From Macrostomum lignano (Eukaryota): 64,000 bases of DNA. The position numbers and the translations under genes are program-made. Shown piece by piece: positions 33,457 through 41,978 of the stretch (positions within the stretch are counted from its first letter, which is position 1; each line of letters opens with the position of its first letter). The DNA lies in contig NIVC01001818.1 of the NCBI GenBank assembly GCA_002269645.1, positions 6,459-70,458 on the forward strand, given 5' to 3'. The notes below the pieces were generated by a model. The model made no database searches. It saw only the letters and a program-made list of their open reading frames with translations, and was not told where the DNA came from.

Positions 33457-36400
33457 CTAGTCAGTAGAGTGCAGCTGGTTGCCACCCTCCCCTGCTGCGT
33501 CTCCATGCGCTGTGTCTCTCAGCAGCGAGTTGGCTTCCCTCAGCAGGGTGTCCGCCTTGCGCAGCATCATCCTGCTCAGCTCGAGTCGAGTGGCACCCGA
33601 ATAATCCGACCCGTTGTCCTGATCGTCTTCTTCGGGCTGGGCGTCGGCTACAAACGGCGTCGATTCTTCTGGAACAGCCGGGATGGAGTTGGCCGAGTTG
33701 TTCACCCCGCCGCCAGCAAACTGCTGCTGCAGCTGCTGCTGCTTGGCTCCAACGCCGCGAAGCGAACTGCGGGAATGCGAGTTCCGGCCAGACATTAACT
33801 GTCCGTACGGACTCGACGGTCGGGAACTGTGACGCGACGATGCTGGCGGCACATCGTCGTAAAGTATGCGCGACATTGAGTCGGACACTCCCTGCAGGTA
33901 GTAGAGACTGGCTTGGGTTTGACCAACAACCGGCGGGAGCGTTCGAGACCGGTGCATCCCTGGCGCCTCGATGTAAGTTGTCTCCATCGTGCGCACGGAC
34001 GAGCGTTGCGGCTGATGACGAGCCATCCGAGGAAGAACCTCCTCGTACATGTCCTCGCCGCCCGCCCCAGTGGCGCCGCTGCCAGCTTGGTTTGCTAAGT
34101 CCTTCTCCACCACTTGGACGGTGCTGACGCAGAGGCAGTGGGCGAGGCAGCCGGGCGGCTCCCGCTTGCGACGTCGAAGCGCTGAAGAGAGGACAGATTT
34201 TGGGTTTGGTGATGAAAGGGTTCAAAGTTAGGAAATTATAGATTTATAAGCAACAAATATTCGTTGGAGGGCTTATGAGCATCGTCCTACAGCCAGCGCT
34301 GAGGCATCTGTCCTTCGTGCCTGTCTGCAGGTCTACTGTCGCCAAGATCAGGATTCGACACCCGGCTATTCTGACCTGGAATGAACCCTAACTACATCTC
34401 AAGGCCACTCTTACCTACATCATTGCGTGCGGCTTGTCACAGAGACAAGAAAAAGAAAATAAATAGAAGATCTTCTTCAAGAGGCCTTTAGCTAGTGGCG
34501 GTGAATAATGAGAAATTCAACCCCCCCCCCCCGCTGCGGCTCTTTCCGATGGCATGATGACGTAATCGCATTATTATTCGCAACAGTGACTTTAACAACA
34601 GGGACGAGAGCGACACAATTTAAGCTCTTAGGTCTCCTTTCCTTATGCTTGCGAGTCCCTAGGAGCCTCAATTTATCATCCAGTGAGTAAGGATGAACTG
34701 AGCCTGTAGCTGAGTCAGAGGCATTCTCCATTTAATGTCGCTTTGGTTGGAGACCTATTAAATACGCATCATTCACATTGTTACCACGAGCCAGCTTTAG
34801 CTCGTCCAGGTTCTGGCGTCCAGAACAAGTTAAGATCCGGGAGATCGGGGGACACAGTTTGGCGATATTATAGTTCGGGATCAGTTCGATCGATTAGACA
34901 ATTTCTAGCTTCTGCATTTCTGCATGAACTACAAGCTAAATGCTGAAATCTCTAACGGTAAAAAAGTTAGAGGAAGGAGAAGAGGAGTGTATCAAATTAT
35001 GTAACTATTGGACTCAGTTTTATGCTAAGTGGGTCTCTCTGTTGTGTCTGCAGGAGAAAAATATGAAACTGCATGGAAAAATTTCAGGAAATGCGCTTCA
35101 ACGCATACTGGCTCAAAGTTAGTTTAGAAGTGCACTGCATCGAACCTGTGCAATGTAGATTCCTATGCGTTCTAGAAATCTATTTGGATATTATCGTGCA
35201 GTTAGTCAAGCAAAACTATTGATGCTACTTTTGAATTCAGATAATTTCCCGAGTCTCTGCGCACAGCACTTTTGATCATTCCTCATGTGTCACGAGAATC
35301 GCCTATAGGCCACATGGGGGCAAAGTCCGACTCTTGCTTCGTGATCCCTGGTTCGATTCCCTGAGTGGCCACAGTTTATTTGGGACTTGTGAAGAAAATT
35401 CGCTTGACTGTTGATGTGGAATTCACACCTATGGAGGCCAACCCTCGAAAGGACAGAGAGTGTACCTGTCTGACTATTAGAAAGTCAAAGGGCCGCTGAA
35501 CACCCCATGGGAGCGTGTCTTTGAGCGCGTGTGCCTGCGCACAGTATCGGCGCGCTTGCATGTGCTCAGGAGGCAGCGGACTGGGCAGAACTGCCGTCAG
35601 CGCTGATTGTGGGACCGATGTCACCGATGTCACCCATATCACCCATGTCACCATGTCACCCATGTCACCAATGTCACCCATGTCACCCATGTCACCCATG
35701 TCACCGATGTCACCGATGTCACCGATGTCACCGATGTCACCCATGTCACCCATGTCACCGATGTCACCGATGTCACCCATGTCACCCATGTCACCATGTC
35801 ACCCATGTCACCAATGTCACCCATGTCACCAATGTCACCCATGTCACCGATGTCACCGATGTCACCGATGTCACCGATGTCACCCATGTCACCCATGTCA
35901 CCGATGTCACCGATGTCACCGATGTCACCCATGTCACCCATGTCACCCATGTCACCGATGTCACCGATGTCACCCATGTCACCGATGTCACCCATTTCAC
36001 CGATGTCACCGATGTCACCGATGTCATCCATGTCACCCATGTCACGGCCATGTCACCCATGTCACCCATGTCACCCATGTCACCGATGTCACCGATGTCA
36101 CCGATGTCACCGATGTCACCGATGTCACCGATGTCACCGATGTCACCCATGTCACCGATGTCACCCATGTCACCAATGTCACCCATGTCACCGATGTCAC
36201 CGATGTCATCGATGTCACCCATGTCACCCATGTCACCGATGTCACCGATGTCACCCATGTCACCGATGTCACTGATGTCACCGATGTCATCGATGTCACC
36301 CATGTCACCCATGTCACCCATGTCACCGATGTCACCGATGTCACCGATGTCACCGATGTCACCGATGTCACCCATGTCACCCATGTCACCGATGTCACCC

Positions 36401-39400: not shown

Positions 39401-41978
39401 CCTTTTCTCTCCTATTCACTCCCTTCTCTTTTCTCCCCTATTCGAGTTTATCCCCCCTCTCGTCTCCTCTCTCCTCCATAATTATCTAACCTCCTTTCTC
39501 TTATCTCTCTTCTCTCTCCTCTCTTCCCCTCCTCTAGCCCTCTAGAGGTAAAAATTTTGCGTACCGTTGACTTAGACAAAGGCCCTATTCTGTATTAACT
39601 GTAATCTTTGTTGGTGGCTACGCTCGAAAACGAACTTCAGAACGTGTTGGATAGCATTACCACAAAACGCAAGCTTGCAATTTTACTCGCAACATTTGGT
39701 TGAATTAAGTGACGTGTCTTTCTCTGACACAATGAATAAGATTATATTATATTCAGGTATAGTTCTCTGGCTAAGCTTAACACTAAACCTACAAAGAGGC
39801 TATACTTCCTTCCTCTTTGCAATATTGAGCACATGTAGTAAGGAACAGTGTCTACCAGCCAAAGCCCATTTTGTTGAGGATTAATAAATCACAAAAATTC
39901 ACCTAAATCATATAATTGCAGGGGCTTTTTCGTCTCATTCAGGTCACAGAGTTATTATTCAGAGTAGCAAAAACTGCTTTTCACAAGCGTACGTGAGCCG
40001 CAAACAGCAGGCAGGAAGACTGTCCCGCATTTTTGCAAATGGTGGGTGACTCAGCTCAAAAAACATGCACAGAGTGCAGTAGCCTCTTTCACTCTCTTTC
40101 TCGGTGTCTCTTCACTGCCTATACTACACTATACAACACTAGCTACATGTATACAGCTAGTTGGAGCACAAAAAAACGATAGCTCAATGGTTTCTCAGTC
40201 ATGGTTGAATTAAAATTAAATCAAATTAAAATTAAGAATTAAATTTCAAAGTCTAACGAGTCCTTGGACATGAGAGTGTGGATTGTTAGAATTTCCAAGA
40301 TGTCTAAAAACTCATGGGGAGTTGCTGAGATGTCAGGGCTCATGGGGGAGTTGCTGGGATGTCAAGGCTCATGGGGGAGTTGCTGAGATGTCAAGGCTCA
40401 TGGGGAGTTGCTGGGATGTCAAGGCTCATGGGGGAGTTGCTGAGATGTCAAGGCTCATGGAGGAGTTGCTGAGATGTCAAGGCTCATGGAGGATTTGCTG
40501 AGATGTCAAGGCTCATGGGGAGTTGCTGAGATGTCAAGGCTCATGGGGGAGTTGCTGGGATGTCAAGGCTCATGGGGGATTTGCTGAGATGTCTAGGCTC
40601 ATGGGGGATTTGCTGAGATGTCTAGGCTCATAGGGGATTTGCTGAGATGTCAAGGCTCATGGGGAGTTGCGGAGATGTCAAGGCTCATAGGGGATTTGCT
40701 GAGATGTCAAGGCTCATGGGGGATTTGCTGAGATGTCTAGGCTCATGGGGGATTTGCTGAGATGTCAAGGCTCATAGGGGATTTGCTGAGATGTCAAGGC
40801 TCATAGGGGATTTGCTGAGATGTCAAGGCTCATAGGGGATTTGCTGAGATGTCAAGGCTCATGGGGGATTTGCTGAGATGTCTAGGCTCATGGGGGATTT
40901 GCTGAGATGTCAAGGCTCATGGGGAGTTGCTGAGATGTCAAGGCTCATGGGGAGTTGCTGAGATGTCAAGGCTCATGGGGAGTTGCTGAGATGTCAAGGC
41001 TCATGGGGAGTTGCTGAGATGTCAAGGCTCATGGGGAGTTGCTGAGATGTCAAGGCTCATGGGGAGTTGCTGAGATGTCAAGGCTCATGGGGAGTTGCTG
41101 AGATGTCTAGGCTCATGGGGGATTTGCTGAGATGTCTAGGCTCATGGGGGATTTGCTGAGATGTCAAGGCTCATGGGGGAGTTGCTGAGATGTCTAGGCT
41201 CATGGGGGATTTGCTGAGATGTCTAGGCTCATGGGGGAGTTGCTGAGATGTCAAGGCTCATGGAGGATTTGCTGAGATGTCAAGGCTCATGGAGGATTTG
41301 CTGAGATGTCAAGGCTCAATGGGGAGTTGCTGAGAGTCAAGGCTCATGGAGGATTTGCTGAGATGTCAAGGCTCAATGGGGAGTTGCTGAGAGTCAAGGC
41401 TTATGGAGGATTTGCTGAGATGTCAAGGCTCAGTTGGGAGTTGCTGAGATGTCAAGGCTCACGGAGAAGTTGCTGAGATGTCAAGGCTCACGGAGAAGTT
41501 GCTGAGATGTCAGGGCTCATGGGGAGTTTCTGAGATGTCAAGGCTCATGGGGGAGTTGCTGAGATGTCAAGGCTCATGGGGAGTTGCTTAGAGTCAAGAT
41601 AGGCCAAGAATCAAAATAAGAGTTGGGGTTAAGCCTTAAAGATGAGTCTCGATGCCAAAGCTCATTGTGGATCTGATATCTTAGGCTGAATAGCAGGCTT
41701 TCAGAGCTGATACCTTCTTTGGTTTGAAAAAATATTTTTCTCCAAGAAACTAATTAAAATAGTGACTGCATAAAGTCAAAAGCTACTTTGAGCTGTTTGG
41801 GGGAGCACGCCCTTTGATTGAGTAAGTCCCTGAACATTTCTATAGTTATTCCATTTCGCTATGCAAGTATGTTGAGATTCTTACCTGACAGGGTGACGTA
41901 GATTTCGCTAGTTGTCAGCAGCAGTGCAATTAACAATATGCTTGCAGCGTTAGGCAATCCGACTCTTGTGCGATCCAT
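33457..41978 (-). CDS. Type I membrane receptor: signal peptide, single Ig-like domain with Cys-rich insert, Pro/Thr stalk, TM, Tyr-motif tail, ~513 aa. Exons 41978-41885, 39166-38642, 38173-38090, 36986-36873, 34181-33457
   Basis: Four phase-1 GT..AG introns give one continuous frame: [31 protein letters not shown] / Ig cysteines HLTCEVTG...AGEWYCRF / stalk / [27 protein letters not shown] / LRRRKRE stop-transfer / cytoplasmic tail ending at stop 33457. Confidence 0.82.
35308..35371 (+). other. Degenerate tRNA-like fragment / SINE head
   Basis: B box GGTTCGATTCC. Ends GGCCAC/GTGGCC can pair as an acceptor stem, but D and anticodon arms are not recognisable. Confidence 0.3.
35618..36746. repeat. 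9-bp satellite (ATGTCACC[C/G])n, ~125 copies
   Basis: Directly visible. Lies in the intron between the TM exon and the cytoplasmic exon. Confidence 0.97.
37062..37985. repeat. CT-rich minisatellite GAGCTCTCTACCT(CT)nGT
   Basis: Directly visible. Unit length varies in CT steps. Confidence 0.95.
39330..39545. repeat. CT-rich low-complexity tract
   Basis: Directly visible polypyrimidine degenerate repeat. Confidence 0.8.
40290..41600. repeat. Minisatellite, 28-29-bp unit GGGGA(G/T)TTGCTGAGATGTC(A/T)AGGCTCAT
   Basis: Directly visible, ~45 copies, in the first coding intron of the Ig receptor gene. Confidence 0.95.

What the first reader, a model, noticed from the sequence alone, without database searches (positions are those of the whole stretch)
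33457..41978. Hidden Ig-superfamily receptor with ITIM-consensus motifs, assembled from five exons buried among satellites
Seen: the signal-peptide, stalk and TM exons are too short for the ORF track but splice in frame, all at phase 1. The Ig-like domain has an unusual Cys-rich insert ([33 protein letters not shown]). The disordered tail contains ILYDDV (33867-33850) and SPYGQL (33813-33796), both matching the (I/V/L/S)xYxx(L/V) ITIM pattern, plus DMYEEV, TTYIEA and SLYYLQ. Juxtamembrane CIRCCL suggests palmitoylation. Known: Ig+ITIM receptors recruit SH2 phosphatases in vertebrate immunity and cnidarian allorecognition. Inference: an undescribed invertebrate inhibitory or recognition receptor. 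Short motifs can arise by chance.
Basis: partly seen in the sequence, partly recalled or inferred. Interest (0 to 1): 0.72.

Follow-up and report, generated by a model that had tools for sequence, protein, structure and literature searches.

The report
Flatworm-specific Ig-like receptor gene, already annotated
The five-exon gene is real and encodes a single-pass membrane protein with a cryptic Ig-like domain found only in flatworms; it is already in GenBank as a hypothetical protein, and its one deeply conserved tyrosine motif looks more like an adaptor-docking site than a classical inhibitory ITIM.

Summary
On the minus strand, five GT-AG exons, all joined in phase 1, give a 513-aa protein. 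Its parts are a signal peptide, an Ig-like domain, a Pro/Thr-rich stalk, a TM helix, a Cys-rich juxtamembrane segment, a disordered tail and a C-terminal helix.

The window is Macrostomum lignano. The model is 100% identical to GenBank PAA63717.1, a hypothetical protein from an RNA-seq-guided annotation, so the gene is not hidden.

No Pfam family matches. AlphaFold2 folds the ectodomain confidently (pLDDT 91.9), and every listed Foldseek hit (top 50) but one is an antibody or nanobody complex.

An exhaustive HMM search finds about 30 relatives. Every named one is from a flatworm (Macrostomum, Monogenea, Trematoda, Cestoda), and none is characterised.

- **ILYDDV:** conserved across the phylum as (V/I/T/S)(V/I/L)YDDVA.
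- **SPYGQL:** not conserved.
- **Chance:** two ITIM-pattern matches are expected by chance at P≈0.05.

Acidic residues at +1/+2 fit the published Nck SH2 motif (pY-[D/E]-[E/L]-[P/V]) rather than SHP-2 N-SH2 (pY-φ-x-φ).

The two genomic copies show purifying selection (pN/pS 0.16) with no Ig-domain replacements, which argues against allorecognition.

Verdict: an uncharacterised, lineage-specific IgSF receptor. The inhibitory-receptor reading is weak.

The parts
41885..41978 (-). Exon 1: ATG at 41978 and a hydrophobic N-terminal signal sequence ([31 protein letters not shown]); the donor is GTAAGA.
   Evidence: Identical to the N-terminus of PAA63717.1. AF2 predicts a helix at residues 10-37. 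Signal-peptide cleavage is inferred, not tested.
39167..41884 (-). Intron 1 (2718 nt), containing a 29-bp minisatellite of 45 copies at 40311-41598.
   Evidence: The second genomic copy has a 2011-nt intron here.
38642..39166 (-). Exon 2: the Ig-like domain (residues ~49-162, 39116-38775) with 8 conserved Cys (65, 83, 93, 97, 101, 108, 121, 150) and W148, followed by the start of the Pro/Thr-rich stalk.
   Evidence: invariant Cys and Trp. AF2 gives pLDDT 91.9 and pTM 0.83. Foldseek against PDB lists almost only antibody or nanobody complexes, probability 0.99-1.00, TM 0.39-0.58 by query length. No Pfam hit.
38174..38641 (-). Intron 2 (468 nt), with no satellite.
   Evidence: It is 469 nt in the second copy.
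38090..38173 (-). Exon 3: the stalk ([28 protein letters not shown]); the donor is GTAAGT.
   Evidence: The stalk (residues 166-238) is 44% Pro+Thr+Ser and has pLDDT around 45-55.
36987..38089 (-). Intron 3 (1103 nt), containing a ~23-bp GA-rich minisatellite of about 42 copies at 37059-38004.
   Evidence: It is 3665 nt in the second copy.
36873..36986 (-). Exon 4: the transmembrane helix with the family-invariant Asn258, plus the juxtamembrane FCIRCC (36963-36892).
   Evidence: Hydropathy. AF2 helix 241-276 with pLDDT 77-91. N258 is invariant in the TM/juxtamembrane alignment and C262, R264 and C265 are conserved across most of the family.
34182..36872 (-). Intron 4 (2691 nt), containing a 9-bp minisatellite of 126 copies at 35614-36744.
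   Evidence: It is 1524 nt in the second copy.
33457..34181 (-). Exon 5: the cytoplasmic tail and TAG stop (33459-33457).
   Evidence: Residues 306-468 have pLDDT below 50 apart from one residue, so the tail is predicted disordered.
34111..34149 (-). Second juxtamembrane Cys cluster, [13 protein letters not shown] (residues 284-296).
   Evidence: CLCVSTVQV is invariant in the Macrostomum paralogues. A C(L/M)xxCLC(L/V) pattern is kept in trematodes. AF2 predicts a short helix at 283-288.
34036..34053 (-). DMYEEV (Y318), a YEE(V/L) motif.
   Evidence: Present as QYEEL in paralogue P0002, absent in P0003 and in other classes. pYEEI is the Src-family SH2 ligand type (PMC3514216).
33850..33867 (-). 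ILYDDV (Y380), the phylum-conserved (V/I/T/S)(V/I/L)YDDVA motif.
   Evidence: Found in Macrostomum, Cichlidogyrus, Calicophoron, Paragonimus, Echinostoma, Spirometra/Sparganum and Taenia, and in two sequences of unnamed source.
33796..33813 (-). SPYGQL (Y398), an ITIM-pattern match that is not conserved.
   Evidence: It aligns to His in P0002 and to a gap in P0003. No equivalent was seen in other classes.
33508..33588 (-). C-terminal amphipathic helix [27 protein letters not shown] (residues 471-497).
   Evidence: Nearly invariant in three Macrostomum paralogue groups. Recognisable in P0035 and weakly in Cichlidogyrus P0010. AF2 helix with pLDDT 84-90. Hydrophobic moment 1.29 against a shuffle mean of 0.57, P=0.014, with Leu at 472/479/486/493.

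Best explanation
This is a Macrostomum lignano gene for a flatworm-specific type I membrane glycoprotein.

**Shown**
- The five-exon structure.
- A confidently predicted Ig V-like beta-sandwich. It has the canonical B-F cysteine pair (C65, C150) plus six further invariant cysteines that brace a rebuilt C-to-D region.
- A disordered Pro/Thr-rich stalk.
- A TM helix with an invariant Asn.
- Two conserved juxtamembrane Cys clusters.
- A disordered tail with one deeply conserved tyrosine motif, phi-phi-Y-D-D-V-A.
- An amphipathic C-terminal helix.

**Inferred mechanism**
- The ectodomain binds an extracellular or cell-surface ligand.
- The juxtamembrane cysteines are palmitoylated. The TM Asn and the C-terminal helix drive self-association or partner association.
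- On engagement, a Src-family kinase phosphorylates Y380. The membrane-proximal YEEV of the Macrostomum copies may dock the kinase's own SH2 domain.
- pYDDV then recruits an SH2 adaptor. The conserved acidic +1/+2 and Val +3 fit an Nck/Dock-type SH2 best, as at the YDxV sites of nephrin. This would couple the receptor to actin remodelling rather than to a phosphatase.

My confidence by layer is about 0.9 for the architecture and family, about 0.6 for a phosphotyrosine docking role, and about 0.35 for an Nck-type partner.
For: - **Gene model:**, identical to PAA63717.1. The same five-exon layout is seen in the second copy L002 and in paralogue locus L001. The annotation is RNA-seq-guided (PMC5730564).
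- **Fold:** AF2 pLDDT 91.9 and pTM 0.83. Nearly all listed Foldseek hits are antibody or nanobody complexes, at probability 0.99-1.00. Weak sequence-profile hits fall on the F-strand motif of a Fab heavy chain and VEGFR1 Ig domains.
- **Full-length model:** it shows the stalk, TM helix, disordered tail and C-terminal helix.
- **Family:** 30 HMM hits. Every hit whose source was looked up and named is from Platyhelminthes.
- **Motif conservation:**
- **SH2 fit:** NCK1 SH2 prefers pY-[D/E]-[E/L]-[P/V], and the HPK1 pYDDV peptide binds Nck1. PTPN11 N-SH2 prefers pY-phi-x-phi (PMC3514216). Nephrin YDxV sites bind Nck (PMC12203975).
- **Partner availability:** Nck orthologues exist in Schistosoma and Echinococcus (PMC5026347).
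- **Selection:** purifying, pN/pS 0.16.
Against: - No phosphorylation, binding, expression or localisation data exist for any family member. Locus tags are absent from the searchable literature.
- There is a single YDDV site per protein, whereas nephrin uses three, so multivalent Nck clustering is not implied.
- The -2 position is I/V/S/T in 10 of 11 motif-bearing sequences, which also satisfies the ITIM/ITSM pattern.
- YDDV also matches the generic YxxPhi sorting signal.
- More divergent subfamilies (P0017/P0021/P0026, P0020/P0030, P0027/P0031) lack the motif.
- SH2 specificities are taken from mammalian domains, and flatworm SH2 preferences are untested.
- Foldseek TM-scores are only about 0.4-0.63 and E-values about 1e-3, because of the Cys-rich insert.
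Confidence: 0.45

Rival explanations
1. One reading: an ITIM-bearing inhibitory receptor. Phosphorylated ILYDDV, with or without SPYGQL, recruits an SHP-2/Csw-type SH2 phosphatase that damps a co-engaged activating pathway. PZR/MPZL1, SIRP-alpha and PECAM-1 work this way.
For: - Two matches to [ILVS]xYxx[ILV] lie 18 residues apart. The pattern definition is from PMC9546547.
- Y380 is conserved, and its -2 residue is I/V/S/T in 10 of 11 orthologues or paralogues.
- The single-Ig + TM + tyrosine-tail architecture resembles PZR (my own knowledge).
Against: - The second motif (Y398) is not conserved even in paralogues, so there is no conserved tandem site for a two-SH2 phosphatase.
- The invariant Asp-Asp at +1/+2 conflicts with PTPN11 N-SH2's preference for a hydrophobic +1 (PMC3514216).
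- P0002 has Ala at -2.
- Two pattern hits arise by chance in 5% of shuffles.
- No activating (ITAM) partner is evident.
Confidence: 0.15
2. A trafficking signal rather than a signalling site. Unphosphorylated YDDV (YxxPhi) binds the AP-2 mu2 subunit and drives endocytosis or sorting of a mucin-like adhesion or surface-coat protein.
For: - YDDV, YEEV, YGQL and YVSL all fit YxxPhi.
- The stalk is mucin-like, at 44% Pro/Thr/Ser.
- The motif is a single copy, as is usual for sorting signals.
Against: - The conservation extends beyond Y and Phi to D, D and the following Ala, and to the two hydrophobic residues upstream. That is more than a YxxPhi signal needs.
- The motif lies about 110 residues from the membrane in a disordered tail.
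Confidence: 0.2
3. A polymorphic self/non-self (allorecognition) receptor, analogous to Hydractinia Alr proteins, whose cryptic V-set-like domains are likewise visible only by structure prediction.
For: It has a cryptic Ig domain that HMMs miss but AF2 recovers, plus tyrosine motifs in the tail, as described for Alr proteins (PMC9546547).
Against: - The two genomic copies differ by 4 synonymous and 0 replacement changes in the Ig domain.
- The three copies of paralogue P0002 are nearly identical in the ectodomain.
- The gene is single in the window, flanked by unrelated genes.
- Orthologues persist across four flatworm classes with a conserved ectodomain pattern.
Confidence: 0.03

Closest known systems
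Nephrin / Sns-Hibris family (IgSF adhesion receptors with cytoplasmic YDxV sites that bind the Nck SH2 domain)
   Same: Both are IgSF type I membrane proteins whose disordered tail carries a Y-D-x-V motif. Phosphorylated YDxV recruits Nck and actin regulators (PMC12203975). NCK1 prefers pY-[D/E]-[E/L]-[P/V], and a pYDDV peptide binds it (PMC3514216).
   Different: No sequence homology was detected. This protein has one small Ig-like domain against nephrin's eight Ig plus FnIII domains (domain count from my own knowledge). It has one YDDV site against three. Nephrin lacks the Cys-braced Ig insert, the juxtamembrane Cys clusters and the C-terminal helix.
ITIM receptors with a single V-set domain, e.g. 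PZR/MPZL1 and PD-1 (from my own knowledge)
   Same: The architecture is the same: signal peptide, one Ig V-like domain, a TM helix and a tail with [ILVST]xYxx[ILV] tyrosines.
   Different: The conserved motif has acidic +1/+2 residues rather than the hydrophobic or small residues preferred by SHP-2 SH2 domains. The second tyrosine is not conserved. No homology was detected.
Hydractinia Alr family of 'unusual IgSF' proteins (PMC9546547)
   Same: The Ig-like domains lack the classical sequence signature and are recognised mainly through AlphaFold-type models. The tails carry ITIM/ITAM-pattern motifs. Both families are lineage-restricted.
   Different: Alr genes are highly polymorphic and clustered in one complex. 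This gene is under purifying selection and is not clustered in the window. The phylum is different and no homology was found.
Angulins (LSR, ILDR1, ILDR2), vertebrate single-Ig junction proteins (from my own knowledge)
   Same: Both have one V-like Ig domain, a TM helix, a Cys-rich juxtamembrane stretch thought to be palmitoylated, and a long disordered cytoplasmic tail.
   Different: This is a resemblance of architecture only. The exhaustive HMM search returned no vertebrate protein. Angulins lack the six extra ectodomain cysteines and the YDDVA motif.

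Membership tests
Immunoglobulin superfamily (Ig-like fold) | Two-sheet beta-sandwich structurally superposable on Ig domains | tested here: met
   AF2 pLDDT 91.9 and pTM 0.83. Of the 50 listed Foldseek PDB hits, all but one are antibody or nanobody complexes, at probability 0.99-1.00 and TM 0.39-0.58 by query length.
Immunoglobulin superfamily (Ig-like fold) | Cys in strand B and Cys in strand F within a (D/x)xGxYxC-like motif | tested here: met
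   LTC65EV lies in predicted strand B and AGEW148YC150RF in strand F. C150 and W148 are invariant and C65 nearly so across 20 family members. The disulfide itself could not be measured because no coordinates were available.
Immunoglobulin superfamily (Ig-like fold) | Match to a curated Ig-family sequence profile (Pfam V-set, I-set, ig, Ig_2/3) | tested here: not met
   No Pfam family at E<=10 for the protein or its ectodomain. The paralogues gave no Ig-family hit, only sub-threshold matches to unrelated families. The PDB profile search gave only E=0.15-0.84 hits.
Immunoglobulin superfamily (Ig-like fold) | Invariant Trp in strand C | tested here: not met
   Strand C is IRFF followed by Cys83-Pro84. 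No conserved Trp occurs there. The only invariant Trp is W148, next to the F-strand Cys.
ITIM-bearing inhibitory receptors | Cytoplasmic [I/V/L/S]xYxx[I/V/L] motif | tested here: met
   ILYDDV and SPYGQL are present. The chance expectation is 0.39 hits, with P(>=2)=0.053.
ITIM-bearing inhibitory receptors | Motif(s) conserved in orthologues and paralogues | tested here: inconclusive
   Y380 is conserved across four flatworm classes. Y398 is not conserved even within Macrostomum.
ITIM-bearing inhibitory receptors | Residues flanking pTyr compatible with SHP-1/SHP-2 SH2 preference (hydrophobic +1 and +3) | tested here: not met
   Position +1 is Asp in all 11 motif-bearing sequences. Position +2 is Asp in 9, Glu in one and Pro in one. 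The PTPN11 N-SH2 motif is pY-phi-x-phi (PMC3514216).
ITIM-bearing inhibitory receptors | Phosphotyrosine-dependent recruitment of an SH2 phosphatase and inhibition of signalling | not testable with these tools
   This needs peptide pull-down and functional assays.
YDxV / Nck-docking receptors (functional class, e.g. nephrin) | Y-D-x-V motif in a disordered cytoplasmic tail | tested here: met
   YDDV, YDEV or YDPV occurs in 10 of 11 clade members and YDDL in one. The tail has pLDDT below 50.
YDxV / Nck-docking receptors (functional class, e.g. nephrin) | An Nck-type adaptor is present in the lineage | not tested
   The literature lists SmNck2, ShNck1, EmNck and EgNck (PMC5026347).
YDxV / Nck-docking receptors (functional class, e.g. 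nephrin) | Multiple YDxV sites giving multivalent Nck binding | tested here: not met
   There is one YDDV per protein. The Macrostomum copies add one YEE(V/L).
Allorecognition IgSF (Hydractinia Alr-like) | High ectodomain polymorphism or diversifying selection | tested here: not met
   The Ig domain shows 4 synonymous and 0 non-synonymous differences between the two copies. Whole-CDS pN/pS is 0.16. Only assembly copies were compared, not a population sample.
Thyroglobulin type-1 domain (UniProt's name for paralogue P0003) | Match to the Thyroglobulin_1 profile | tested here: not met
   No such Pfam hit at E<=10 for P0003 or for the window's ectodomain.

The most novel reading that the evidence does not exclude
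Flatworms evolved their own surface-receptor family, kept from free-living Macrostomum to flukes and tapeworms. It couples a disulfide-braced, sequence-cryptic Ig domain to a pYDDVA-Nck-actin module that arose independently of nephrin. The invariant TM Asn and the C-terminal leucine-stripe helix would drive receptor clustering. In parasites it could act at the tegument or host interface, or in cell-cell contacts of stem or germ cells.
Probability: 0.25. Interest if true: 0.6.

Novelty: new variant of a known kind. Interest (0 to 1): 0.42.

Why it matters
- **For annotation:** Pfam-negative 'hypothetical proteins' in flatworm genomes can hide genuine IgSF receptors. These become visible once a small family alignment is given to AlphaFold.
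- **For biology:** the family is confined to Platyhelminthes and is present in medically and veterinarily important flukes and tapeworms (Paragonimus, Opisthorchis, Echinostoma, Taenia, Spirometra, schistosomatids).
- **As a target:** a surface-exposed, lineage-specific ectodomain with a conserved signalling tyrosine is a reasonable candidate for studying flatworm cell-cell communication. M. lignano is a transgenesis-capable, free-living laboratory model in which to test it.
- **What it is not:** on present evidence it does not support an invertebrate ITIM-type inhibitory or allorecognition system.

Tried and rejected
- **First splice model:** using the GTGTAA donor for exon 3 broke the frame. 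It was replaced by the adjacent GTAAGT donor.
- **Pfam:** scans of the full protein, the ectodomain alone and two paralogues found nothing useful.
- **PDB sequence and profile searches:** only sub-threshold hits.
- **Alignment A2:** built by mistake with a stop codon as its first row, then discarded.
- **Word-indexed search with the full-length family alignment A3:** it returned only the three Macrostomum proteins. All 8000 scored candidate slots were filled, probably by low-complexity words from the tails, which I did not verify.
- **Repeat search with a trimmed Ig+TM alignment (A5):** it added only four fragments, and the two that carry a source name are from flatworms.
- **Literature search for the five locus tags:** no papers. 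The first ITIM/Macrostomum search returned only vertebrate immunology. Blasutig et al. 2008 (PMC2268406) is not held.
- **RNA genes:** Rfam at relaxed threshold over 33000-42500 gave two plant-miRNA-family hits far below gathering score, lying in repeats, and I rejected them. ARAGORN found no tRNA.
- **Thyroglobulin type-1 label** on paralogue P0003: not reproducible.
- **Allorecognition reading:** rejected on pN/pS and the lack of clustering.

Full report
**1. Observation**

With the exon 3 donor GTGTAA the frame breaks. With the adjacent consensus donor GTAAGT it closes.

The exons are 41978-41885, 39166-38642, 38173-38090, 36986-36873 and 34181-33457. Every intron is GT...AG and every junction is phase 1. 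The CDS is 1542 nt and the protein 513 aa.

Three of the four introns carry minisatellites:
- 29 bp x45 at 40311-41598
- about 23 bp x42 at 37059-38004
- 9 bp x126 at 35614-36744

Tandem and simple repeats make up about 15% of this genome (PMC5730564). Being 'buried among satellites' is therefore ordinary for this species.

**2. Identity of the locus**

A protein search returned Macrostomum lignano proteins.

- The model is 100% identical to PAA63717.1 (BOX15_Mlig014821g1) and 99% identical to PAA94197.1.
- The annotated gene on contig NIVC01001818.1 of GCA_002269645.1 spans 8522 bases and is base-for-base the finding's interval.
- That GenBank annotation was derived from a genome-guided RNA-seq transcriptome assembly (PMC5730564). 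The four junctions therefore have indirect transcript support, although I could not inspect reads.
- The second copy (NIVC01000013.1, L002) and the paralogue locus L001 have the same five-exon layout.

The gene is real and is annotated as 'hypothetical protein'. No paper mentions its locus tags.

**3. Anatomy**

Pfam finds nothing at E<=10 in the protein or its isolated ectodomain. The paralogues give only sub-threshold matches to unrelated families. PDB sequence searches give only sub-threshold hits, which fall on the F-strand motif of a Fab heavy chain and of VEGFR1 Ig domains.

With a 20-sequence family alignment (A4), AlphaFold2 gives a confident ectodomain model. Mean pLDDT is 91.9 and pTM 0.83, with strands A, B, C, a short helix, a Cys-rich hairpin, then D, E, F and G. 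Foldseek against PDB returns almost only antibody or nanobody complexes among its 50 listed hits. Probability is 0.99-1.00, TM is about 0.4-0.63 and E is 6e-4 to 5e-3.

The full-length model shows these parts:

| Region | Residues | Confidence |
|---|---|---|
| N-terminal hydrophobic helix | 10-37 | – |
| Ig domain | 49-162 | pLDDT mostly >90 |
| Stalk | about 170-239 | low; 44% Pro/Thr/Ser over residues 166-238 |
| TM helix | 241-276 | pLDDT 77-91 |
| Short helix over CLAHCL | 283-288 | – |
| Tail | 306-468 | pLDDT <50 |
| C-terminal helix | 471-497 | pLDDT 84-90 |

The C-terminal helix is amphipathic, with Leu every seven residues. Its hydrophobic moment is 1.29 against a shuffle mean of 0.57 (P=0.014).

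**4. Family**

An exhaustive HMM search of 1.84 billion cluster representatives found 30 proteins at E<=1e-3. Every hit whose source was looked up and carries an organism name is a flatworm:
- Macrostomum
- Monogenea: Cichlidogyrus, Protopolystoma
- Trematoda: Calicophoron, Paragonimus, Opisthorchis, Echinostoma, Fasciolopsis, Trichobilharzia
- Cestoda: Spirometra/Sparganum, Anoplocephala, Taenia, Schistocephalus, Rodentolepis, Dibothriocephalus

None carries a functional name.

Invariant or nearly invariant across the family are eight ectodomain cysteines, P84, G146, W148 and the TM Asn258. The FCxRC and CLxxCLC juxtamembrane cysteine clusters are conserved across most members.

**5. The tyrosine motifs**

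Two ITIM-pattern matches in the 251-aa cytoplasmic part occur in 5.3% of shuffles, so the count itself means little. Conservation separates them.

- SPYGQL, TTYIEA and SLYYLQ are not conserved even among the Macrostomum paralogues.
- ILYDDV is conserved:

| Source | Motif |
|---|---|
| Window protein | ILYDDVP |
| P0003 (Macrostomum) | ILYDDVA |
| P0002 (Macrostomum) | ALYDPVA |
| Cichlidogyrus | SIYDEVA |
| Calicophoron | VVYDDVA |
| Paragonimus | VVYDDVA |
| Echinostoma | VVYDDVA |
| P0014 (source unnamed) | VIYDDVA |
| Spirometra | TIYDDLS |
| Taenia | TVYDDVA |
| P0035 (source unnamed) | IIYDDVA |

The motif is absent from three more divergent subfamilies.

The conserved positions are Tyr, Asp at +1, mostly Asp at +2, Val/Leu at +3 and usually Ala at +4. 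This is more specific than the ITIM pattern.

Published SH2 position matrices give NCK1 as pY-[D/E]-[E/L]-[P/V], with an HPK1 pYDDV peptide binding Nck1. PTPN11 N-SH2 is pY-phi-x-phi (PMC3514216). Nephrin's YDxV sites are the textbook Nck docking sites on an IgSF receptor (PMC12203975). Nck orthologues are listed for Schistosoma and Echinococcus (PMC5026347).

I therefore rank an Nck-type adaptor above an SHP-2-type phosphatase as the partner. A YxxPhi sorting role stays a live rival. The DMYEEV site (QYEEL in P0002) resembles the Src-family SH2 ligand type but is confined to Macrostomum.

All partner assignments are inference from mammalian specificities.

**6. Selection and context**

The two genomic copies differ at 17 of 1542 CDS positions, with pS 0.030, pN 0.0048 and a ratio of 0.16. 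In the Ig domain there are four synonymous and no replacement differences. Intron lengths differ greatly between the copies (2718/468/1103/2691 against 2011/469/3665/1524 nt), presumably through minisatellite length change.

The gene stands alone between a Cys-loop channel gene and a cyclin gene. Together with the purifying selection, this speaks against a polymorphic allorecognition receptor of the Hydractinia Alr kind. The Alr family is still a useful precedent for sequence-cryptic Ig domains (PMC9546547).

**7. Verdict**

The protein is an Ig-like, single-pass, tyrosine-motif receptor, but it is already annotated. Only one motif is conserved, and that motif fits adaptor docking better than ITIM inhibition.
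- It is best described as a member of an uncharacterised, flatworm-restricted variant of the IgSF receptor theme.
- Interest is moderate. It is useful for flatworm and parasite biologists and directly testable in M. lignano, but it is not a surprise in kind.

Noticed in passing
window 12032-14951 (+): Two adjacent long ORFs (241 and 706 aa) with multiple leucine-rich repeats (LRR_8 E=5e-17). The second ORF contains a hydrophobic TM-like segment followed by a roughly 200-aa C-terminal region. This is a Toll-like-receptor-like layout, but no TIR hit at E<=1e-3.
   Followed up: partly
window 22338-28366 (-): A Cys-loop ligand-gated ion channel gene. The ligand-binding domain lies in ORF 27056-28366 (E=1e-44) and the TM region in ORF 22338-23240 (E=3e-30). 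A long intron between them holds tandem repeats around 25591-26316, and the first ORF runs on into repeat-derived sequence.
   Followed up: partly
window 447-4487 (+): Several ORFs with C2-domain sequence (C2, E=4e-19 for 447-995). By eye they look like exons of a ferlin-type multi-C2 gene.
   Followed up: partly
window 51795-59458 (+): A cyclin N-terminal domain ORF (51795-52397) and a downstream ORF (58580-59458) with an Arg/Ser-rich C-terminus. By eye this is a cyclin-L-like gene split by an intron full of tandem repeats (about 54525-56070).
   Followed up: partly
window 35290-35375 (-), inside intron 4: A stretch whose complement reads like a tRNA T-arm and acceptor end (GGTTCGATTCCC...). 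Neither ARAGORN nor Rfam calls it, so it may be a tRNA-derived repeat fragment.
   Followed up: partly
window introns 1, 3 and 4 versus L002 (10001-19211): The two genomic copies of the gene keep exon sequence at about 99% identity. Intron lengths differ by up to 2.5 kb, apparently through expansion or contraction of the minisatellite arrays.
   Followed up: partly
window 36918-36920 (-), codon for Asn258: A polar Asn inside the transmembrane helix is invariant in all 19 family members aligned. This hints at helix-helix association in the membrane.
   Followed up: no
P0007 (MetaClust, 734 aa): An older gene model of paralogue P0002 carries a 225-aa N-terminal extension fused to the same Ig-TM-tail protein. 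It is probably a mis-merged prediction.
   Followed up: no
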